Shown here: in pieces, positions 2,340 through 53,465 of the stretch
Position numbering within the stretch: the stretch's first letter is position 1
Layout of the letters: each line of letters starts with the position of its first letter
Origin: Mobula hypostoma
Lineage: Eukaryota
Assembly: GCF_963921235.1 (NCBI RefSeq)
Contig: NC_086100.1
Coordinates: forward strand, 123,504,001 to 123,568,000
Length of the DNA stretch: 64,000 bases
Direction of reading: 5' to 3'
Translations under genes and position numbers: made by a program
Notes under the pieces: generated by a model
Told to the model about the DNA's origin: nothing
What the model saw: the letters and a program-made list of their open reading frames with translations, nothing else
The model's database searches: none

Positions 2340-3320
2340 CCATCACACTTTCTGTTCCTTTTATATGTGTTATTAATAATCCCTTAGACCAGGCTCCAAC
2401 TTAGCAAACTTCATAGTGGCCAAAAACACTGATGAATTACGATCAATGTAACCTCTCATTGGGTTTCGTCCTGGACCACAATAACAAGGGTCGTCCCATT
2501 CCGACTTAGTTTTCTCTCGCAAGGGCTTAGTAGGAGGGGGAGGGGTAGTAACCACAGAGTTATTGCAAAACTTCCTACAGTACCCCACCATTTCCAAGAG
2601 CCTTCTGAGGGCCCTCTTGTCTGTCGGGGTTGGGATGTCAGAGATAGCCTGCACTGTAGCTTGCATCGCTGCCAGCTGCCCCAGTGTCACCACAATTCCC
2701 AGGTAAGTGACCTTCGTGTGGCCGAACTCATTTTTTTCAAGGTTCACTATCAAGCTGGCTTCAGACAGCCGTATTACATCGCCAATACACACCTCTGTGT
2801 TCGTCAGCCCTTTAGTCACTGAATTACTCATTCTATAGGACTGTTGCTCACTAGGCTGACCTAGTGTAACAGACACCACCCAACGTCCCAGTTCTTTGCA
2901 TCGCCTCAGGACAGTCAAACACACGGGTGCGAGTCGTTTAATTACTTCTCCTGGAGTCGCTTTGTTCGGGGATTAAGGGAGAGACCTTATCAGCAGACCT
3001 GGCCAAAACAATAGCCTTCTCCCATCTGGTCGATACCATACTCATCTTTTCAAAATGGTTTTTTTCTCTTATCAGGGCTTCATTGATTTCCGTGCTAATA
3101 TCGACTAGGTTTGTTAGCATATCAAAAGCCTGTGACCGTCTCAGTTCGTGTCGGCCATAATCAATAACATCCTTCCTCCGGTGCAGCCGGTAAACCTCTT
3201 TCATGATTCCACCAACTGTTTCCTCCAGCACCGCAAAATGTCCACCGGGGGGTACCTTGTGGGCCAGGTTAAAAATCTCATCCCCATAACTCTTTTGCAC
3301 CACCCCCCATTCCTCATCTG
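2340..3320 (-). pseudogene. pol: pol remnants: integrase Zn-binding piece, then RT and RNase H pieces
   Basis: IFNLAHKVPPGGHF (integrase HHCC start) precedes LIVNLEKNEFGHTKVTYLG..PTPTDKRALRRLLEMVGYCRKF (RT C-terminal part). No protease motif, YxDD or integrase DDE core seen. Confidence 0.7.
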
Positions 3321-3339
3321 CGGGTACTGTACTTGGTTT

Positions 3340-4553
3340 CCTTTTCCCGTCTCCTTCTTTGGGGCAAAGCACCTGGACGCAAAGTGTCCGACTTTCCCGC
3401 AATTATAACAGACGACTCCAGGAGACTTCCTACCAGACTGCTCCCAGTCTACCTTATCCTTCTCACTAGTCCCCGGCTTACTTTCTAACTTTTCTGGCAG
3501 ACTCTCCCCGCCATCCTGACTACCCTTCTGGTAGCCTTTACTCAGGGCAAACTTCATTTTATGCGTCAACGCATACTCATCCGCTAACTTAGCAGTTGCG
3601 GCTAATGTGGCTGCCCCTTTCTCATCTAGGTAGGGTCTCATACCCTCAGGGACACAACCTTTAAACTGCTCAATCAGGATCAGCTGTAGCAGTCTGTCAT
3701 AATCCCCCTCTACCCCCTTTGAGGCGCACCAACGCTCACAACATGTCTGCATCTCACGGGCAAACTCTAAATACGTGCGGTCCACTGCTTCCTCACATTC
3801 CGGAACCTCTGCCGGTATGCCTCCGGGACCAACTCATAAATCCTGAGGATGGCCTCTTTCACCACCTCATACCTCTGGGCATCTTCCGCGGACAGAGCTG
3901 AGTAAGCTTCTTGGGCTTTCCCTTTCAGTACACTCTGAAGCAAAACAGCCCACTTATCCCTCGGCCAGTCCTGACATGTAGCAACTTTTTCGAAATGGAG
4001 AAAGTACCGATCCACGTCGGTATCGTCAAATGGGGGAACCAGCCTAACCTCCTGGGTCGCCCGGAACCCTCCACCTTGGTTCAGCACGGGCCCCTGCTCG
4101 GCCCTTATCTTTAACTTCTCCAGCTCAAATTCCCTTTCCCTCTGCCTCTCTCTCTCTTCTCGCTCCCATTGCCTCTCTTTCTCTTCTCTCTCCAACTGTC
4201 TCTCCCTCTCTCTCTTGCCTTTCTAACCCTCTCTCTTGCCTTTCTAACTCTCTCTCCTTCTCTTCTCGCTCCAACTGCCGTACCTGGAACTCGTGCTCGA
4301 GTCTCAGTTTTTCAAGCTGCACCTGTACCGCGTCTCCAGCAGGTTTTTCAATAGACACCACCCCCAGCTCGCCTTGGGGAAACACACCTTTAGATACATA
4401 GTGCTCTACGATAGTTCTGTGTATCTCCTCTCTCCTCATTGTCGACTTCCCCTTAGCAAGATTCAACCGTTTGGCCACAGCTACCAATTCCGATTTCCTG
4501 GCATCCTCTAATGCCTCCAAGGTTGGCGCCTTTATAATTTCCTCAGCCTCCAT
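3340..4553 (-). pseudogene. gag: gag (coiled coil, SCAN-like capsid domain, CCHC zinc knuckle), frameshifted
   Basis: Overlapping ORFs 4125-4553, 3767-4195 and 3201-3785 give VPPFDDTDVDRYFLHFEKVA..W..LLQSVLKGKAQEAY, PEAYRQRFR, LILIEQFKGCVPE and CYNCGKVGHFASRC. Confidence 0.88.
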
Positions 4554-13048: not shown

Positions 13049-14831
13049 GGATTTAAATTTAACTGATGTGTGGAGGGTGCATAATCCATCTGCTAAGGAT
13101 TCCTTCTTCTCCACAAGTCTTAAAACTTTCTTTTGGATAGATTACATTCTTATATCCTCCTTTGGTACACTCAATAGGAATTTCTGCCCAGACATTTATC
13201 TGTCATATCTACTTTTAATTATGACAAAATTAAAAATAAGGCTACCAGGTGGAGGTTTAACTCCACCCTTCTGAAAAACGACGAATTTCTATCACAACTG
13301 AGAACAAAACTGACAGAATTTATAAATTTAAATAAAAATAGTGTCTCGGATGTGACAGTGATTTGGGCCTCCTTCAAGGGTTTCTTACGAAATAATGCCA
13401 TATGGTTCAGTTCTCACCTACATAAAAGCCGGCTTCAAAAGATTTCCACCTTAGAAGAACAATGTAAGGTTTTGGAAAATGATCTCAAAAGGAGATACAC
13501 CATTACAAAAGAAAATGAGCTCAAAACAAAACAAGCAGAATTAAATGATTTATTAAGAAGCAGGGCAGAATATATGAACCATATAACCAAACATAAGTAT
13601 TATGCAGAAGGCAGCAGACCGAGCCATCTTTTAGCTCTAACTCTCAAACAACAGGAAACTAGAAGGTCCATACCAGTGATTAGATGTGCTAAATGTGGAG
13701 TAGTATCTTCAACAGAGGAAGTAAACGAGACATTCAAGAATTACTTTGAAGAATTGTATACAAGTGGCTCAGTTCCTTCTGAGAATGACTTCACAGATTT
13801 TTTTTAGTGGATTAGACCTCCCTACATTGTCATTAGAGGACACCAAAACTCTAGACTCTCCCATTACACTTAAAGCAGTCAAAGCTACCAATAAGGGCTG
13901 TACGCCAGGTATAGATGGCATACCTGCAGAACTTTACCTAGCACTTTGGGATGTTCTTGGACCAGTATGGTTAGAAACATTAAATTATGCTGTCGGAAAT
14001 GGCGCTTTCCATAGAGATCTAAACACAGCCCTGATCACAGTTATACCTAAGCCCGGTAAGGACCCCTTGGAGTGTACCAATCACCGTCCAATCTCCTTGA
14101 TAAATGCCGACCTCAAGATATTTTCCAAAGTCTTAGCCAGTAGACTTGAGACAGTAGTTGGGAAAATAATTAGCCCGGATCAAACGGGCTTTATTAAGGG
14201 GCGTCTCACATCTGATAATATTCGCCGGCTCTTACACATACTGAGTGCAACACATAAAATCCCACCTGCCTGTGGCCTGCTATTTCTAGATGCTGAAAAA
14301 GCATTTGATCACCTTGAATGGCCATATTTTTGGAGAGTTCTAAAAGAAATTTAAGTTCAGCGATAAATTTATCAATATGATTCAAACACTGTATGCTAAT
14401 CCTTCAGCCCGGGTACGTGTGGGAGGAGGTTTCTCAGAGTTATTTGGCATAGACGGGGCACACGACAAGGGGACCCTTTGTCTCCTATAATTTTTACTAT
14501 ATCTGTTGAACCGCTTGCACATTTAATTAGAAACTCTCCTCAGATCTCCCCTATTACAATAGATACGACATCACATTCAATATCACTTTACGGGGACGAC
14601 ACGCTAGTTTATATAGCAAATGTTCAACAAACTCTCCCTATGTTTTAAAAACACTGGAGCAATTTGGATTTCTTTCAGGATACTAAGTTAATTTGTCAAA
14701 ATCAGCACTGATGCCAATTAATACAGATAAAAATAAGGTGTCTCTCCCTCCCCAGATTAAGGTTACAAATGAGGTCCTCTATTTGGGTATTAAAGTTAAT
14801 ACCTCCCTATCATCTGTGGCTAAAACAAATT

Positions 14832-21674: not shown

Positions 21675-22220
21675 GAATCATACGGACAGAAATAGGTCTC
21701 GCTCACATTGTCCATGCCCATATATGGTAATCACATTTGCCTTTTAGGCCAGCATTCCTCAAATCCTTTCCTATCTAGGCACCCGTACGAATTCATTTTA
21801 AATGTTCTAATTGTACCTGCTTCTACCAACTCCCTGGTAGGTCTTTCCAGAAAATCACCGGAATCTGAAAAGCATACCTTTCTGATCTTTCCTCTCACAT
21901 TAAACCTGTGCCCTCTGGTTCTAGGCACCCTGCCCTGGGAAAAAGACTGCTATTCCAAACTCTACCTTCCCCCCTACCCCACATAATTTTATAAACCTCT
22001 ATAGGATCATCCCTCAGCCTTCTACTGTATATTCCAGGGAGAAAAAACAAACTTACCCCAGTCAATCATTCGTTGCAACTATAACCTGGCATTCCAGACA
22101 GTATTCTAGTAAATGTCTTCTGCACTCCCTCTTCTCTCCTACCACATCATGTCATGTGACAACTAGAGCTGTACACAATATGCCAAATACAGTATAACTT
22201 ACGTTTTGTACAGTTGCAAC
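21675..22220 (-). mobile_element. CR1 3' fragment
   Basis: MPRTRGHRFNVRG..VEAGTIRTFK. Confidence 0.75.
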
Positions 22221-22460
22221 ATAACGTCCAGCAAATAAGAACTCTGTTTCCCTCTGCACATGATCCACATGCTTGCACATTCTTCCCATTACTGAGTGGC
22301 TTTCTGCTGAATGCCGTGGTTTCCTACTACTGTAAATCCCAGAGATTAATTGATCACCATTGGTTACTCCTTAGAGGAGGTAAATGGGAACAAGAACCAA
22401 AGGGGAGTTGCTGGACGTGAGAGAAATATGTGTCACTGGAAAATAAAGAGAGGGTATTAG

Positions 22461-22895
22461 CAGGGGTGCAGTGCTAGCTGGAGCACACCAGAGCATGTCC
22501 AGCACCTCTTTAAGAAAAAAGCCAAAATAAACAAGCTAGTTACTCAGGTGCCACCCAGGGTGAGTTGAGTATCTCAGAAACTGCTGATCTCCTGGGATTT
22601 TTACGTACAACAGACTCTGGAGTTTACAAAGAATGGTGCCAAAAACAAAAAAATAACCAGCAAGTGGCTGTTCTGTGAGTGAAAACATCTTGTTAAATCC
22701 ACTCACTTTATGTGTTTTTGTTTTTGGCACCATTCTTTGTAAACTCCAGAGTCTGTTGTGCGTAAAAATCCCAGGAGATCAACAGTTTCTGAGATACTCA
22801 AATCACCCTGGGCGGCACCTAATTAATTAGCTTGTTTATTTCGGCTTTTTTCTTAAAGAGGTGCCAGACGCGCTCCGGCTAGTACTGCAGCCCTG
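22461..22895. mobile_element. hAT-type palindromic MITE carrying a Tc1 transposase fragment in both arms
   Basis: 8-bp TSD GGTATTAG (22453-22460, 22896-22903), CAGGG termini, arms of ~190 bp; LSISETADLLGF..VYKEWC encoded in the arms. Confidence 0.88.
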
Positions 22896-22903
22896 GGTAT
22901 TAG

Positions 22904-23132
22904 ACCATAAAACTCCACCATGGACACTCCTAGGCCATTGGTCTAGCAACCCCACCCCATAAAAGCCCAGAGCTATAGAAACACCAGCAGCAACTCCAAA
23001 GACCTCATACCTGGGAGAGAAAGGATCTTTGAAGATGGGCTACTCCTGGGAACAACTTGAAAGAGTGGCCTAGGGCAGATGACTAGCAAGCTGCTGTTGG
23101 CAGCCTATGCCCCAGTAGGGGTAACAGGAGAA
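22904..23132 (+). mobile_element. Non-autonomous RTE-like retroposon, 3' part (host of the MITE)
   Basis: GYSWEQLERVA..AAVGSLCPSRG resembles RTE-clade ORF ends. Confidence 0.45.
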
Positions 23133-23965
23133 GGTCAGACCATAAGACGATGGAGCAGAATTAGACCATTCAACCCTGTGAGTCTGCTTCATGACTGGTC
23201 GGATTGTTCTTGTGGAAGCAGACAAAGGCCTGACTGGCTCAATGACAACTTTGCATGCTGTAATAAATAAGGATCTCGAAATAACTAATAGAAATTGTAA
23301 TGAAAACATGGAAATTTCTAAGGAAACTTTAGGGACTATACCAGTAAACAAAATCAGCCTTCACGTGACAGGCTAAATTTCTGTTGTTTCACTTATACTA
23401 GTTTTCAGCTGTTTACAATATGACAATGTGAATGTTTGAACTTCTGTTTTCTCTTTGCATGCATCTAATGAAGAACAGATAACTGATATAAGAACATGTT
23501 ATGGAACCTTTTGCCTTTATATTTGGGACCCAAGGATCACTGACAGCCACATGAGAGAAAGACAAAAACAACAATTTCATAATGTATCACATATTTTCCA
23601 AAATTTACACCAAACTGTATACCACTTTAATTCCTGTTTTGTTTTCTTGAAACTGATTCACCCAAAACACTGCATAAGGTTTTGCCGGGAACAGTCAGAA
23701 TACCTTTTGAATGGGATGCAGCCAGTACTCGAGTGATCCACAAGTGCCCTGAGACAAGGTTAAAGCAATAAGATGTAAAATTGTAAATTATATCCTTTGC
23801 AAAATCTGACGAAGATATAATGTAAACAGCATTGATGTTTATCCTGTGCCGTAGTTTCTATTTGCTGCAATCACGATAAGCTCAAACATTTATAACACAT
23901 ACATTACAGAAGAATATTCAGAAACGGTTACTTTGGGAGCCAATGAATCAATCTGTTGAAATGAT

Positions 23966-25734: not shown

Positions 25735-27245
25735 AAGTTGATTAAAACGTGTGCAATTGATATGGTTGGCGAAGTTTTAAGTCATGATGAGAAAACCAAG
25801 AAAACGGTTGTGGAGCTATTAAAGACGGTGCCATTGCCAGCTAACACGGCAACAAGAAGAATAGAAGTTTTAGCGGAGGAGTGTTTTTCCAATGTACTCA
25901 CTGATTTGGAGAAAGCAGAAGCCATATCACTAGCCATAGACTCGTCCTGTGACCGAACCGATATGGAAGAGCTATCTGTGTTCGCAAGATTTTTTGATGG
26001 GAAGACCTTTCGGGAAGAGCTACTTTGTTTGCTTCCTCTGCCTGGGTGCACAACTGGGGAAATAATTTTTAATGAATTGACACAATTCTTTGAGAAGATT
26101 GGCTTGGATGTGAGCAAAATTGTGTCCGTTGTCACCGATGGGGCTCCGTCGATGGTGGGACAACACAAGGGCTTGGTAAGCAGGTTTGTCGCTGTTAACC
26201 CAGCACTCTTGGCATTTCATTGCATTATTCACAAATCAGTGTTGTGCGCCAAACTGTGTGGGAAAATATAAGAGGTGCTGGATAATGTGACAAGACTGGC
26301 AAATTTCGTTCGTGAGAGTTCTAGTCTGCAACATCGCCTTTTCAGAGCATTGCTGGAGGAAATGTCAGCGGAACACAAAGATCTTTTGCTGCATAATGAT
26401 GTTCGCTGGCTGAGCAAAGACCGTGTGTTGGAGAGGGTGTGTGACCTGCGCGATGAGCTTGTGCCATTTTTATCCAGCCTGCAGAGCCAAAAAGCCCAAG
26501 GATTTAAGAGGGTTTTAAGTGACAACAAGGTGATGGCACATATTCTTTTTTTGTGTGACGTCATGTCTCATATAAATCAACTTAATCTGCAATTACAAGG
26601 CAACAACCACACTGTTGCGGACATGTACGAGGCGATTGAAGCTTTCCGGTCAAAGCTGAACCTTTTGGAGCGAGTCATTCACGGGAGAAAGTTGCACTTT
26701 CCATGTCTGCGGGAGCATTGCGAGAAGAACGAAATGCAGGGGGATCCAGTGATGAAGGATTTCGTGACGAGCCTGGCAGAAAACTTCAGGGAACGATTTG
26801 AAAGCTCCCCTAAACTGTCAAGTGACATCTTCCTCTTCCTGAGACAGCCATTCTCCATTTCAGCTGACGGCCAGTGGACTGCAGAGGCCAAAAGACTGGT
26901 GCCTTCCATAGATGAGGCAACTCTTCAGATGGAGGTCTTGGAAATGGGAACATCTGATTTGCTCAAAGCACAACACAAGGACATCGGGGGAGTGACTTTT
27001 GGATCAATGTGGTTCCCCAAGCTCAATTCAAAAACACAAGAGCAATTGCAATGCTCCTACTCACACTGTTCCCCTCCACGTACATATGTGAGTCATCGTT
27101 TTCTTCAATGAACTCTATCAAGAACCAGGACAGAAACAGACTCTCCAATGCACATCCTGGCCAGTGCCTCAGGATTGCGACAACAGAATACAGGCCCCAC
27201 ATCAGAAGGATTGCCTCACCCCGTCACTGTCACTTCTCTCACTGA
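25735..27245 (+). pseudogene. hAT transposase (one stop near 26270, one frameshift near 26990, no BED finger)
   Basis: ORFs 25738-26271, 26275-27111 and 27009-27245. Confidence 0.88.
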
Positions 27246-27480
27246 TCGGTGGGTGAATCAATTTATTTTTGTCCATTTGTCAATCTTGTTGTGGTATAAT
27301 AATATTACAACAACAATAATACTGATAATTTCATTTATAGCCACACTTCATACTTCAAATGCTACATAGCTTAATTAAAAAGAACAAATAGATTAGATGA
27401 GAGAACAGAAACAGTGGAAACGGCAGTACTACTAAAATTCTTTGTGTGGAAGAGAAGTGGTGAGAACTACCATGTTTACA

Positions 27481-27481
<1 letters not shown>

Positions 27482-27541
<60 letters not shown>

Positions 27542-27545
27542 TGTA
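27482..27545. repeat. (TG)n microsatellite
   Basis: Seen directly. Confidence 0.98.
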
Positions 27546-27683
27546 TTTTAAGTCCCAGATGAGTTCTCAATATGACAGCTGACAGTTGTGATAGCTAGAG
27601 TCATAATTAAATGGTTGGTTTTGGACTTATTTTGTTTCAAGAGTGCATTTTTTTCTTTGAGAATCACAGGCCTAAATTAGTAA

Positions 27684-27728
<45 letters not shown>

Positions 27729-27765
27729 CACTACTACTACTATTACTATTACTACTACTACTACT
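27684..27765. repeat. (CTA)n microsatellite
   Basis: Seen directly. Confidence 0.98.
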
Positions 27766-28434
27766 AATGGTAATAGCAGCAACAACAACACCGGTCCATA
27801 AAACAACTTACCATAAAAAAAACCCTGGATGTTTTGGCCCTTGGCTTGGCACGCTTGATATAATTTGGTGCTTGTGGAAATCTAATGCGGGAACCCTGTT
27901 CTACTGGGATTAGTGGTGGGGCCTCAAATTATAATAATTTATATAAATTATTTGGATGAAGGTACCAAAGGTAGGGTTAATTTACTGTACTTTGCTATTG
28001 ATGTAAAAACTGGAAGGGAAGGAAATAGCAGTAGCAATATAAGCAGGGGTAAAAAAGGAAATAGATAACTCAAATGAGGGAGCGAAGATTGGGTAAAATA
28101 TTAAAAAGCATATTTACCCATTTTGTAAGGCAAAATAAAAATACAAGCCTATTATTTCAATGGAGAGGGACTGCAGAGCCCTATGATGCAGAGGGATCCT
28201 TGTGGCTATGTGTACAATAGGCCAGCATGGAGTTAGAACAAGTAATTAGGAAAGCCAATAGAATGCTATTGTTTATTGCAAGGAGAAAAAGAGACTGTAA
28301 TCTTGCAATGATATAGGGCATTGGGGAAACTGCACCTGAAGAACTATTGAAAGTATTGGTCTCCTTATTTAGAGAAGGATGTTATGCATTGGAAAGTTGA
28401 TATAAACATCTGAAATAGTGGCTTGTCTAAGAAA

Positions 28435-50010: not shown

Positions 50011-51516
50011 TTAGAACCATAGAACCATAGAACACTACAGCACAGAAAACAGGCCATTTGGCCCTCCTAGTCTGTGCCAAAACTTTATCCCACTAGTCCC
50101 ATTGACCTGCACCCAATCCATAACCCTCCAGACCTCCCCCATCCATGTATCTATCCAATTTATTCTTGAACTTAAGAGTGAGCCCGCATTTACCACATCA
50201 GATGGCAGCTTGTTCCACACCCCCACCACTCTCTGAGTGAAGAAGTTCCCCCTAATGTTCCTCCTAAACCTTTCCCCTTTCACCCTAAAGCCATATCCTC
50301 TTGTATTTATCTCTCCTAATCTAAGTGGAAAGAGCCTACTCGCATTTACTCTGTCTATACCCCTCATAATTTTGTAAACCTCTATCAAATCCCCCCTCAT
50401 TCTTCTACACTCCAAGGAATAAAGTCCTAACCTGTTCAATCTTTCCCTGTAACTCAACTCATGAAGACCCGGCAACATCCTAGTAAATCTTTTCTGCACT
50501 CTTTCAATCTTACTGATCTCCTTCCTATAGTTAGGTGACCAGAACTGCACACAATGTCACCAATGTCTTATACAACCTCCCCATAACATCCCAACTCCTA
50601 TACTCAATACTTTGATTTATGAATGCCAGGATGCCAAAAGCCTTCTTTACAACCCTGTCTACCTGTGACGCCACTTTCAGGGAACTATGTATCTGAACTC
50701 CCAGATCCCTTTGTTCCTCCACACTCCTCAGTGCCCTACCACTTACTGCGTAAGTCCTACCTTGATTTATCCTTCCAAAATGCAACACCTCACACTTGTC
50801 TGCATTAAATTCCATCTGCCATTTTCTGGCCCATTTTTCCAGTTGGTCCAGATCCCTCTGCAAGCTTTGAAAGCCTTCCTCATTGTCCACAACACTTCCA
50901 GTCTTAGCGTCATCAGCAAACTTGCTGATCCAATTTACCACATTATTATCTAGATCATTGATATAGACAACAAACAACAATGGTCCCAGCACAGATCCCT
51001 GAGGCACACCACTAGTCACAGGCCTCCAGTCTGATAAGCAATCATCCACTACCACTCTCTGTCTTCTCCCATACAGCCAATTTCGAATCCAGTTTACAAC
51101 CTCTCCATGGATACCTAGTGCCTGAACCTTCTGAAATAACCTCCCATGTGGGACCTTGTCAAAAGCCTTACTAAAGTCCATGTAGACAACATCCACAGCC
51201 TTTCCTTCATCTGCTTTCTTGGTAACCTCCTGGAAAAACTCTACAAGATTCGTTAAACACGATCTACTACGCACAAAGCCATACTGACTATCCTTAATCA
51301 GCCCTTGGCTGTCCAAATACTTGTATATCCAAGCTCTCAGAACACCTTCCAATAATTTACCTACTACTGATGTCAGGCTCACCAGCCTGAAATTACCTGG
51401 CTTACTTTTGGAGCCTTTTTTAAACAACGGGAACAACATGAGCTACCTCCCAATCCTCTGGCACCGCACCCATGGCTCAGTACATTTTAAATATTTCTGC
51501 CAGGGCACCTGCAATT
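50011..51516 (-). mobile_element. CR1 LINE RT plus 3'UTR
   Basis: ORFs 50531-51439 and 50035-50550 (MDFSKAFDKVPH, GVPQGSVLGPLLF, KFADDAK); (TTCTATGG)n tail. Confidence 0.95.
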
Positions 51517-51570: not shown

Positions 51571-52059
51571 CTGAAATATAAAGAACAATTCTTCTTCAAA
51601 TGAATTATATGCAATTAAAATTGTTGAATTTTGAGTATTTATTCATAACTTTTATTCAAATGAATGATGTTTTGTGTGGCTTGCATTGAGCTTTCAATAA
51701 CCCTACTTAAGAAAAAGCTCAATTGTCAGCTTTTGAATAAAGACTAGTGAAATAATAAGACCTGGTGAAATTGGTATCACTTTTATATTACATGAAGTGA
51801 GGAAGAACAATTCTTTACTCTAAAAGCAGGCTCTCCCTTTTATCAATGCATGTTTTTAATATCTTAACACACTGCTGTGAATTTCCACAGTTCTCCCATG
51901 CAACGAGTATTTTTTTCTGAGAATGACATGATTCTTTTGACTATAACATGAAGATGAAAACACTTTGAAAATTTAAGTATTTTCAAACATTTAGTAAATT
52001 TTATGCGAAACGTTGTATAGTAATGTACATTGCACTGAAACACACTGTTAAATCACACA

Positions 52060-53465
52060 TTTTGTTCAAAAAAGGTAGTAGGAATAGTCTGGGTAATTAT
52101 CGACCAGAGAGCCTTACGTCTGTGGTGGGAAAGCTGTTGGAAAAGATTCTTAGAGATAGGATCTATGGGCATTTAGAGAATCATGGTCTGATCAGGGACA
52201 GTCAGCATGGCTTTGTGAAGGGCAAATCGTGTCTAACAAGCCTGATAGAGTTCTTTGAGGAGGTGACCAGGCATGTAGATGAGGGTAGTGCAGTAGATGT
52301 GATCTATATGGATTTTAGTAAGGCATTTGACAAGGTTCCACACAGTAGGCTTATTCAGAAAGTCCAAAGGCATGGGATCCAGGGAAGTTTGGCCAGGTGG
52401 ATTCAGAATTGGCTTGCCTGCAGAAGCCAGAGGGTTGTGGTGGAGGGAGTACATTCAGATTGGAGGATTGTGACTAGTGGTGTCCCACAAGGATTGGTTC
52501 TGGGACCTCTACTTTTCGTGATTTTTATTAACAACCTGTATGTGGGGGTAGAAGGGGGGGTTGGCAAGTTTGCAGACGACACAAAGGTTGGTGGTGTTGT
52601 AGATAGTGTAGAGGATTGTCGAAGATTGCAGAGAGACATTGATAGGATGCAGAAGTGGGCTGAGAAGTGGCAGATGGAGTTCAACCTGGAGAAGTGTGAG
52701 GTGGTACACTTTGGAAGGACAAACTCCGAGGCAGAGTACAAAGTAAATGGCAGGATACTTGGTAGTGTGGAGGAGCAGAGGGATCTGGGGGTACATGTCC
52801 ACAGATCCCTGAAAGTTGCCTCACAGGTAGATAGGGTAGTTAAGAAAGCTTATGGGGTGTCAGCTTTCATAAGTCGAGGGATAGAGTTTAAGAGTCACGG
52901 AGTAATGATGCAGCTCTATAAAACTCTGGTTAGGCCACACTTGGAATACTGTGTCCCGTTCTGGTCACCTCACTATAGGAAGGATGCGGAAGCATTGGAA
53001 AGGGTACAGAGGAGATTTACCAGGATGCTGCCTGGTTTAGAGAGTATGCATTATGATCAGAGATTAAGGGAGCTAGGGCTTTACTCTTTGGAGAGAAGGA
53101 GGATGAGAAGAGACATGATAGAGGTATACAAGATATTAAGAGGAATAGATAGAGTGGATAGCCAGCGCCTCTTCCCCAGGGCACCACTGTTCAATACAAG
53201 AGGACATGGCTTTAAGGTAAGGGGTGGGAAGTTCAAGGGGGATAGTAGAGGAAGGTTTTTTACTTGGAGAGTGGTTGGTGCGTGGAATGTACTGCCTGAA
53301 TCAGTGGTGGAGGCAGATACACTGGTGAAATTTAAGAGAGTGCTATACAGGTATATGGAGAAATTTAAGGTGGGGGGGGGTTATATAGGAGGCAGGGTTT
53401 AAGAGTCGGCACAACATTGTGGGCTGAAGGGCCTGTACTGTGCTGTACTATTCTGTGTTCTATGG
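52060..53465 (+). mobile_element. CR1 LINE RT plus 3'UTR, young (RT frame open)
   Basis: 459-aa ORF 52023-53402 with all RT motifs (KFADDTK); 5'-truncated. Confidence 0.95.

What the first reader, a model, noticed from the sequence alone, without database searches (positions are those of the whole stretch)
22461..22895. hAT MITE that captured a Tc1 transposase fragment and folded it into a hairpin
Seen: hAT signatures (CAGGG ends, exact 8-bp TSD GGTATTAG). The inner part of each ~190-bp arm encodes LSISET(A/V)DLLGFLRTTDSGVYKEWCQKQK (from 22565 on plus, about 22716-22802 on minus), which I recognise as the N-terminal HTH region of a vertebrate Tc1 transposase (recalled as SISETADLLGFSRTTVSRVYREWC). 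Both arms share the same apparent derived changes (LRTTDSG), implying the inversion came after capture. Inference: a cross-superfamily chimera mobilised by a hAT transposase. Read-through would give ~100 bp of dsRNA against Tc1 mRNA, conceptually a mobile silencer like maize Mu killer.
Basis: partly seen in the sequence, partly recalled or inferred. Interest (0 to 1): 0.75.

Follow-up and report, generated by a model that had tools for sequence, protein, structure and literature searches.

The report
hAT-type foldback MITE carrying Tc1 fragment
A 435-base dead "jumping gene" of the hAT type in a ray genome carries, folded back on itself, a piece of the enzyme gene of an unrelated (Tc1) jumping gene; it is a real, multi-copy curiosity, but nothing yet shows it does anything.

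Summary
Window 22461-22895 is a 435-bp near-perfect palindrome with CAGGG/CCCTG ends. It is flanked by an exact 8-bp duplication (GGTATTAG). As RNA it would fold at -312 kcal/mol (z = -33).

The inner part of both arms is a piece of a Tc1 transposase gene, about codons 35-84 of the N-terminal helix-turn-helix. The best hit has E 7.6e-8 among 1.8 billion proteins. Real Tc1 copies in the same genome leave the alignment at 22547 and 22808, reading on into the upstream Tc1 ORF.

The outer ~85 bp of each arm are not Tc1. They belong to a very abundant short palindromic MITE family. The Tc1-bearing form is a minor subfamily of it.

Other copies, 85-90% identical, carry the same Tc1/terminus junction. 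They occur in the same species and in one about 6-10% diverged. Two of them stop exactly at base 22895. This insertion is shared with a species about 3% diverged.

So the hAT-type chimera reading is supported. The hAT call rests only on TSD length and end motif. The order of events is inferred, and the "mobile silencer" idea is untested: this locus has no cover in the one possible RNA run.

Earlier scan notes list only this same stretch. It is a new member of a known kind, of modest interest.

The parts
22453..22460 (.). Left copy of the 8-bp target-site duplication GGTATTAG
   Evidence: family D7; the ninth shared G is the element's own last base.
22461..22895 (.). Whole 435-bp foldback element (non-autonomous, no intact ORF)
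   Evidence: RNA fold -312.5 kcal/mol, z -32.8.
22461..22546 (+). Left outer arm: CAGGG terminus plus subterminal sequence. It is not Tc1 and is shared with an abundant short MITE family. It contains a 10-bp insertion (22487-22496) relative to the right arm.
   Evidence: Real Tc1 contigs leave the alignment before 22547 (loose ends). Joints from 22520-22551 to 22808-22830 show short forms. No significant similarity to a Tc1 5' region.
22547..22564 (+). Junction zone. GGTGCC is shared by the Tc1 ORF (Gly-Ala codons) and apparently by the short MITE forms, so it may be the microhomology used. The next 12 nt are diverged from Tc1 in both arms.
   Evidence: Two sets of loose ends at 22547 and 22565, and the letters between joints. 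Inference.
22565..22667 (+). Left inner arm: Tc1 transposase gene fragment in sense (LSISETADLLGFLRTTDSGVYKEWCQKQK, then a +1 frameshift in an A-run, then S-K-W)
22668..22697 (+). Loop. It continues the same Tc1 reading (..LFCE*KHLVK, matching ..QFCG.K.LV of Tc1 proteins), so left arm plus loop are one colinear Tc1 piece.
   Evidence: tblastn second HSPs 22638-22694, E 0.005-0.07 in a tiny database. This is weak on its own but colinear. Fold.
22698..22819 (-). Right inner arm: inverted copy of the Tc1 fragment, from the S-E-W codons back to the Gly-Ala codons
   Evidence: Tc1 loose ends behind 22808.
22820..22895 (-). Right outer arm, ending in the CCCTG terminus
   Evidence: Alignments of two independent contigs stop exactly at 22895 while the contigs run on (records 4 and 12).
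22896..22903 (.). Right copy of the 8-bp target-site duplication GGTATTAG

Best explanation
This is an old, dead insertion of a non-autonomous cut-and-paste element of hAT type. It belongs to a minor subfamily of a very abundant palindromic MITE family in this ray genome.

Its core is about 150 bp of a Tc1 transposase gene (codons about 35-84, with no Tc1 end and no start codon), followed by an inverted copy of most of that piece.

Most likely origin (inferred): during repair or replication of a MITE copy, the polymerase switched template into one of the thousands of Tc1 copies, possibly at the shared GGTGCC. It copied about 150 nt and then snapped back on its own new strand. This gave a palindrome whose two ends are both good hAT-type termini. 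A hAT transposase supplied in trans then moved the chimera as one unit, making 8-bp duplications.

The Tc1 piece is most likely a passenger without function.

Shown: the structure, the Tc1 identity and its limits, further copies with the same junction, and sharing of this insertion with a related species.

Inferred: the hAT enzyme, the template-switch and snap-back route, and neutrality.
For: - Exact 8-bp TSD and CAGGG ends; these are the hAT hallmarks per PMC3014272.
- Tc1 identity of the inner arms.
- Limits of the Tc1 part: 175 and 146 contigs of the same genome diverge at 22547 and 22808 into sequence reading LSDFDRGMIV, the upstream Tc1 ORF.
- Left arm plus loop are colinear with Tc1, and the right arm stops at the S-E-W codons. 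This is the polarity expected of a snap-back.
- Both arms share five derived residues.
- Other copies bridge the Tc1/terminus junction at 85-90% identity: X1 record 4, X20 records 12 and 13, X9 record 27. Records 4 and 12 end at 22895 while the contig runs on 130 and 350 nt.
- The organism B contig 21894-22488 spans the flank and the first 28 nt of the element, so the insertion predates that split of about 3%.
- Capture by template switching at microhomology, and rare multicopy hAT 'Pack' elements in vertebrates, are documented (PMC8277862).
Against: - No autonomous hAT with matching ends was found. The only hAT transposase relic in the window (25738-27245) has unlike candidate ends.
- The TSD GGTATTAG does not fit the NTCTAGAN-type target preference of Charlie-like hATs listed in PMC3014272.
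- TSDs of other copies could not be read, so transposition as a unit rests on alignment end points.
- The direction long form -> short forms or the reverse is unresolved.
- The microhomology claim rests on a few single contigs.
- The inner arms are more alike (95%) than the outer arms (87%). This could mean two separate events, though CpG decay explains most of the difference (Fisher p = 0.054).
Confidence: 0.7

Rival explanations
1. Two-step origin. A pre-existing, already imperfect palindromic MITE broke at its centre, and a Tc1 snap-back fragment was pasted in as filler by end joining. Alternatively, a Tc1-derived foldback landed in the MITE. The structure and mobilisation are the same; only the history differs.
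For: The inner arms are 95-97% alike against 87% plus a 10-bp indel for the outer arms. Short forms with many different centres exist (joints and letters between). Palindrome centres are known break sites (general knowledge).
Against: The identity difference is borderline (p = 0.054), and about half of the outer mismatches are CpG-type. There are no TA duplications or Tc1 ends inside the element, so transposition of a Tc1 element into it is excluded.
Confidence: 0.15
2. Functional mobile silencer. Copies lying in transcribed DNA give a hairpin RNA with about 100 bp of stem identical in part to the 5' coding region of Tc1 mRNA. This feeds siRNA or piRNA pathways that repress Tc1, as Mu killer does for MuDR in maize.
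For: A very stable hairpin is possible. The stem covers the transposase 5' ORF, as in Mu killer (PMC3440606) and Ac killer (PMC13635294). Contigs of a run guessed to be RNA contain other copies with the Tc1/terminus junction (X20 records 12, 13). The Tc1 family is very abundant.
Against: There are no small-RNA data. This locus has zero cover on both flanks in X20, and the RNA label of X20 is itself a guess. The arms are old and decayed, about 10% from the Tc1 majority letters. The subfamily is small. There is no sign of selection on the stem beyond what CpG content explains. Long perfect hairpins in vertebrate somatic cells are more often edited or ignored than diced (general knowledge).
Confidence: 0.06
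3. It is not hAT. The element was moved by another enzyme that makes 8-9-bp duplications (Mutator-like with a 9-bp GGGTATTAG, P, or Merlin).
For: A 9-bp direct repeat is formally present if the last G is counted as flank (D7). Long TIRs are typical of MULEs. The TSD does not fit the common hAT target consensus.
Against: With a 9-bp TSD the two ends fall out of register, whereas with 8 bp they are symmetric. CAGGG fits YARNG and matches the starts of known vertebrate hAT TIRs such as CAGGGGTCC... MULEs, P and Merlin have other end motifs and are rare in vertebrates (PMC8277862 for MULEs; otherwise general knowledge).
Confidence: 0.06
4. The whole arm, ends included, derives from the left end of a ray Tc1 lineage with an internal deletion (a Tc1 foldback MITE), and the 8-bp flanking repeat is chance.
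For: By eye there are short colinear matches to a Tc1 5' region (CTGGCAC, TAAACAA..GCTAAT). Depth at 22506 is of the same order as over the Tc1 ORF part. Earlier scan notes mention palindromic Tc1 mini-MITEs in this genome (unchecked).
Against: Alignment of the outer arms to the Tc1 5' region of L003 is no better than random window segments (z <= 1.4). N-terminal extensions of the nearest Tc1 ORFs do not match the outer arms. There is no TA duplication in register. An exact 8/8 flank match by chance is about 1.5e-5.
Confidence: 0.03

Closest known systems
Non-autonomous hAT elements / hAT MITEs of vertebrates (e.g. the hAT-N families of Anolis and Xenopus)
   Same: Small, non-coding, 8-bp TSD, YARNG ends starting CAGGGG, high copy number, and dependence on a transposase supplied in trans (PMC3014272).
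   Different: Here the whole element is one long palindrome, and its core comes from the transposase gene of another superfamily. No autonomous partner has been identified.
Pack-TIR elements of animals (Pack-hAT; Tan et al. 2021, PMC8277862) and plant Pack-MULEs
   Same: Foreign DNA of a few hundred bp sits between transposon ends. It is acquired by template switching at microhomology. Multicopy cases with separate TSDs exist but are rare (4 of 281 unique cases, including a hAT-N8_XT case in frog).
   Different: Pack-TIRs are defined by non-TE cargo. Here the cargo is a fragment of another transposon's gene, and it is present as an inverted duplication.
Mu killer (maize) and Ac killer 1
   Same: An inverted duplication of the 5' part of a transposase gene that can form a hairpin RNA if read through (PMC3440606, PMC13635294).
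   Different: Those are single, immobile loci derived from the very element they silence, with siRNAs and silencing demonstrated. This element is multi-copy, sits inside the ends of a different superfamily, targets (if anything) Tc1 rather than its own mobiliser, and has no RNA evidence.
Tc1/mariner-derived MITEs (Stowaway-like; microhomology-mediated miniaturisation, PMC3814204)
   Same: It contains Tc1 sequence, and microhomology-mediated rearrangement is the likely route.
   Different: There are no Tc1 ends and no TA duplication. The Tc1 part is internal ORF sequence only, so Tc1 transposase could not move it.

Membership tests
hAT superfamily (non-autonomous member) | 8-bp target-site duplication | tested here: met
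   GGTATTAG at 22453-60 and 22896-903, exact. Seen for this one copy only.
hAT superfamily (non-autonomous member) | Terminal motif YARNG in inverted orientation | tested here: met
   CAGGG at both ends. Criterion as stated in PMC3014272.
hAT superfamily (non-autonomous member) | An autonomous element with the same termini encoding a hAT transposase | tested here: inconclusive
   The window holds one decayed hAT transposase (25738-27245; weak DUF659, DUF4371 and Dimer_Tnp_hAT hits). Its candidate ends (25530/28391) are unlike the MITE's. The rest of the genome is not searchable here.
hAT superfamily (non-autonomous member) | Other copies flanked by different 8-bp duplications | not testable with these tools
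   Read laying returns coordinates, not the contigs' flanking letters. Two independent contigs do end their match exactly at 22895.
MITE | Short (<800 bp), no coding capacity, TIRs, TSD, many copies | tested here: met
   435 bp with stops in all frames. For copies, 84-128+ distinct contigs per position and summed depth 1e4-8e5 against about 15 on the flanks (depth is not a true copy number).
Tc1/mariner element or Tc1-derived MITE | TA target-site duplication and Tc1-type terminal inverted repeats | tested here: not met
   No TA duplication lies in register with the palindrome. The outer arms are not similar to a Tc1 5' end. Only ORF codons about 35-84 are Tc1.
Pack-TIR (sensu PMC8277862) | Internal non-TE sequence with an identifiable parental copy, flanked by TIR-TE sequence | tested here: not met
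   The cargo is itself TE-derived (Tc1), so it falls outside the definition, although the architecture and likely mechanism are alike.
Mu killer-type silencer locus | Inverted duplication of the 5' part of a transposase gene | tested here: met
   Arms 22547-22667 and 22698-22819.
Mu killer-type silencer locus | Read-through hairpin transcript, small RNAs from it, and silencing of the target element | not tested
   No RNA run on record holds the locus. X20 (RNA by guess) has zero cover on both flanks. There are no small-RNA data.

The most novel reading that the evidence does not exclude
The Tc1-bearing subfamily is a mobile hairpin 'vaccine'. It is spread by a hAT transposase, and copies landing in germline-transcribed DNA make double-stranded RNA against the 5' end of Tc1 transposase mRNA. 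One transposon superfamily would then disseminate a trans-silencer of another. Its burst would coincide with the shutdown of the Tc1 family in devil rays.
Probability: 0.05. Interest if true: 0.75.

Novelty: new member of a known kind. Interest (0 to 1): 0.3.

Why it matters
It is a clean, well-delimited example of how MITE families diversify. One can see a template switch into an unrelated, abundant transposon, followed by a snap-back and then mobilisation of the chimera as a unit in a cartilaginous fish, a group whose DNA transposons are little described. It also warns annotators that Tc1 'transposase' hits in such genomes can sit inside hAT-type elements. If small RNAs from the stem were shown to act on Tc1, it would be the first mobile, cross-superfamily analogue of Mu killer in an animal. 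Nothing here supports that yet.

Tried and rejected
- Pfam on the 54-aa and 39-aa arm peptides gave nothing (only a chance Nepo_coat_N hit at E 0.12). The peptides are too short and decayed.
- The search for homologous proteins with the 54-aa ORF found no candidate.
- Two metagenome scans were run. The junction-specific 24-mer had 0 hits. The subterminal 22-mer had two hits (L001, L002) that share only those 22 bases, so they are chance matches.
- I tried to get DNA of the nearest Tc1 ORFs (P0001, P0005, P0016, P0029, P0055). The ray Tc1 5' end therefore could not be aligned.
- P0065 looked as if it shared the non-Tc1 'KQAS..GA' junction. Its contig L003 is an ordinary, distant Tc1 (75% to one arm, not palindromic). 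The outer arms do not align with its 5' region better than random segments. My idea that the outer arms are Tc1-end derived is rejected for lack of support.
- Rfam gave only sub-threshold matches to long plant miRNA hairpins (MIR8562 94 bits against 211 needed, and others). These are generic hairpin look-alikes.
- Inner arms are more alike than outer arms (95% against 87%), but p = 0.054 and the gap is largely CpG decay, so it dates nothing.
- The arm mismatches run in both transition directions. There is no one-strand A>G excess of the kind earlier notes report for Tc1 repeats in this genome.
- There is no second copy or short form in the 64-kb window.
- Literature searches found no description of this element or of a hAT MITE with a Tc1 hairpin core.

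Full report
**What is there**

Window 22461-22895 is a 435-bp element that begins CAGGGGTGCAG and ends CTGCAGCCCTG. The 8-mer GGTATTAG lies directly before it (22453-22460) and directly after it (22896-22903). An exact 8/8 match at positions fixed by the palindrome's ends has a chance of about 1.5e-5.

The two halves are inverted copies, 180-220 nt long and 89% complementary, with 10 extra bases at 22487-22496 in the left half. As a single RNA strand the element would form one long hairpin of -312.5 kcal/mol. Shuffled sequences average -114 kcal/mol, giving z = -32.8. All six frames are broken by stops. The 64-kb window holds no second copy.

**The inner arms are Tc1**

The plus strand from 22562 and the minus strand from 22804 read (E/D)LSISET(A/V)DLLGFLRTTDSGVYKEWCQKQK.

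- A 54-residue ORF through the left arm was scored against 1.84 billion representative proteins. It gave 81 hits at E <= 1e-3, the best at 7.6e-8.
- The longer hits carry HTH_23 and HTH_Tnp_Tc3_2, the paired DNA-binding domain of Tc1 transposases.
- The alignment shows the familiar N-terminus MGKK.DLSDF.RGMIVGAR..GLSISETADLLGFSRTTVSRVYREWCEKQK.SSE.QFCG.
- tblastn places residues 36-74 of the nearest protein (P0001) on 22547-22663 at 69% identity, and residues 35-70 on 22822-22715 at 72%.
- After a +1 shift in an A-run, the left arm and the loop go on reading ..SKWLFCE*KHLV, colinear with ..SSEQQFCG..LV of Tc1 proteins. These second HSPs are weak but in order.

Left arm plus loop (22547 to about 22697) are therefore one continuous piece of a Tc1 gene, about codons 35-84. 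The right arm is an inverted copy of it that starts at the S-E-W codons (22698-22705).

Both arms share S>L, V>D, R>G, R>K and E>Q relative to the homologues. They also differ from the majority letters of the genome's own Tc1 copies at the mirrored positions 22602/22764 and 22614/22752.

**Where Tc1 stops, and what the outer arms are**

I laid Logan contigs on 21700-23700. The runs were four runs of the source species (coded organism A), one run of a species about 3% diverged (B), one run of a species about 6-10% diverged (C), and one run of A that is RNA by guess.

Unique flanks have word depth about 15 in A. Bins inside the element sum to 1e4-8e5, and 84 to more than 128 distinct contigs cover single positions. 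The tool warns that this is not a copy number, but both components are clearly very abundant repeats.

- In A, 175 contigs leave the alignment just before 22547 and 146 just behind 22808. Their loose ends read CTAAGTGACTTTGACCGTGGAATGATTGTT, which translates to LSDFDRGMIV, the Tc1 ORF upstream of the captured piece.
- Real Tc1 copies therefore match the element only between about 22547 and 22808. The outer 85 bp of each arm are something else.
- Other contigs join 22520-22551 directly to 22808-22830 with a few odd letters between. These are short palindromic forms of the same ends without the Tc1 core.
- Depth falls from about 1.8e5 at 22506 to about 3.5e4 at 22539 and about 1.4e3 at 22543. 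The Tc1-bearing form is thus a minor subfamily (order 1e2 in depth units) of a family two orders of magnitude larger.
- The hexamer GGTGCC at 22547 occurs both in the Tc1 ORF and, judging from a few single contigs, in the short forms. It may be the microhomology at which the two were joined. I rate this as tentative.

**Is the chimera multi-copy and mobile?**

Among the few contigs the tool lists, four carry both the Tc1 part and the outer arm at 85-90% identity to this copy:

- X1 record 4 covers 22657-22895.
- X20 record 12 covers 22715-22895.
- X20 record 13 covers 22736-22864.
- X9 record 27 covers 22713-22851.

Records 4 and 12 end their match exactly at the element's last base, while the contigs run on for 130 and 350 further letters unlike this locus. 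This is what independent insertions of the same unit look like. It also shows the chimera in a species 6-10% diverged.

At this locus, a 594-nt contig of organism B spans the left flank, the duplication and the first 28 nt of the element, with 18 differences and one gap. The insertion is therefore older than that split.

The flanks of the other copies are not returned, so their TSDs could not be read.

**Superfamily**

An 8-bp duplication with YARNG ends is the hAT signature. Known vertebrate hAT repeats begin CAGGGGTCC.. (PMC3014272).

A 9-bp reading (GGGTATTAG) puts the two ends out of register. There is no TA duplication in register, and the outer arms do not resemble a Tc1 end, so Tc1 transposase could not have moved the element.

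Against a firm hAT call:

- I found no autonomous partner.
- The target GGTATTAG does not fit the NTCTAGAN-like preference of Charlie-type elements.
- The evidence comes from a single copy.

The window does contain a decayed hAT transposase at 25738-27245, with motifs such as TDGAPSM, HCIIH and CESSFS and weak DUF659, DUF4371 and Dimer_Tnp_hAT hits. Its candidate ends differ from the MITE's.

**How it most likely arose and works**

The architecture is: outer arm, then a Tc1 piece with no Tc1 end and no start codon, then a loop that continues the Tc1 reading, then the inverted Tc1 piece, then the inverted outer arm. This fits a template switch from a MITE copy into one of the many Tc1 copies during gap repair or replication, followed by a snap-back on the nascent strand. 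The resulting palindrome has two good termini.

Template switching at microhomology and rare multicopy hAT 'Pack' elements are documented in vertebrates (PMC8277862). Those are defined by non-TE cargo, so this element resembles them in mechanism but not by definition.

A two-step history remains possible, in which filler was pasted into the centre of an older imperfect palindrome. The inner arms are 95% alike and the outer arms 87% alike, but the difference is borderline (p = 0.054) and largely CpG decay.

**The silencer idea**

Structurally the core is a small analogue of Mu killer or Ac killer 1 (PMC3440606, PMC13635294). Beyond that nothing supports the idea.

- No run on record as RNA holds the locus.
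- In the run guessed to be RNA, both flanks have zero cover, and the aligned contigs come from other copies or from Tc1 itself.
- Contigs cannot reveal small RNAs.
- The arm mismatches show ordinary two-way transitions, not a one-strand editing footprint.
- Rfam gives only sub-threshold generic hairpin matches.

I keep the idea at about 5%.

**Context and earlier notes**

Earlier notes of this scan, which I did not check, call the genome a devil ray (Mobula). They mention abundant Tc1 elements, palindromic Tc1 mini-MITEs and several hAT relics elsewhere. They list this stretch only once, and a look-up by sequence was blank.

**Verdict**

The structural interpretation is supported, with the correction that this is a minor subfamily of a large MITE family. 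The hAT assignment is probable but not proven. The functional idea is untested. This is a new member of a known kind and of modest interest.

Noticed in passing
window 25738-27245 (+), candidate ends 25530 and 28391: Decayed hAT transposase in three adjoining ORFs (motifs TDGAPSM, HCIIH, VRWLS, CESSFS; weak DUF659, DUF4371 and Dimer_Tnp_hAT hits). A candidate 2.86-kb element has TAATG.. ends (11/14 complementary) and a 7/8 TSD. Its ends are unlike the MITE's.
   Followed up: partly
window ~22940-23240 and ~21767-22034: Two other high-copy repeats flank the MITE (summed contig depth up to about 4e4 and about 9e3 against about 15 for unique DNA). The right one begins about 45 bp after the MITE and shows many internal deletion joints around 22986-23100. 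Neither was identified.
   Followed up: no
window 3201-3782 (-): ORF with a SCAN domain plus a CCHC zinc knuckle, i.e. a retroviral or Gypsy-type gag relic.
   Followed up: no
window 50531-51436 (-), 52023-53399 (+), 13746-14351 (+): Three reverse-transcriptase ORFs (RVT_1, E 1e-16 to 1e-35). Two of them face away from each other within 3 kb.
   Followed up: no
window 27355-27913: A (CA)n microsatellite followed by a long CTG/leucine-type repeat, just downstream of the hAT relic.
   Followed up: no
L003:1120-1400 (Logan SRR31175875): A distant Tc1 copy whose ORF has about seven extra codons (AKQASLT). They look like a tandem duplication of the GAR.AGLS segment of the first helix-turn-helix.
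   Followed up: partly
ENA sample ERZ26222911 (proteins P0001, P0005, P0016, P0027, P0029, P0055): All the closest Tc1 ORF fragments in 1.8 billion proteins come from one ENA 'metagenome' assembly with contigs of 5-34 kb. It probably consists largely of host (elasmobranch-like) DNA.
   Followed up: partly
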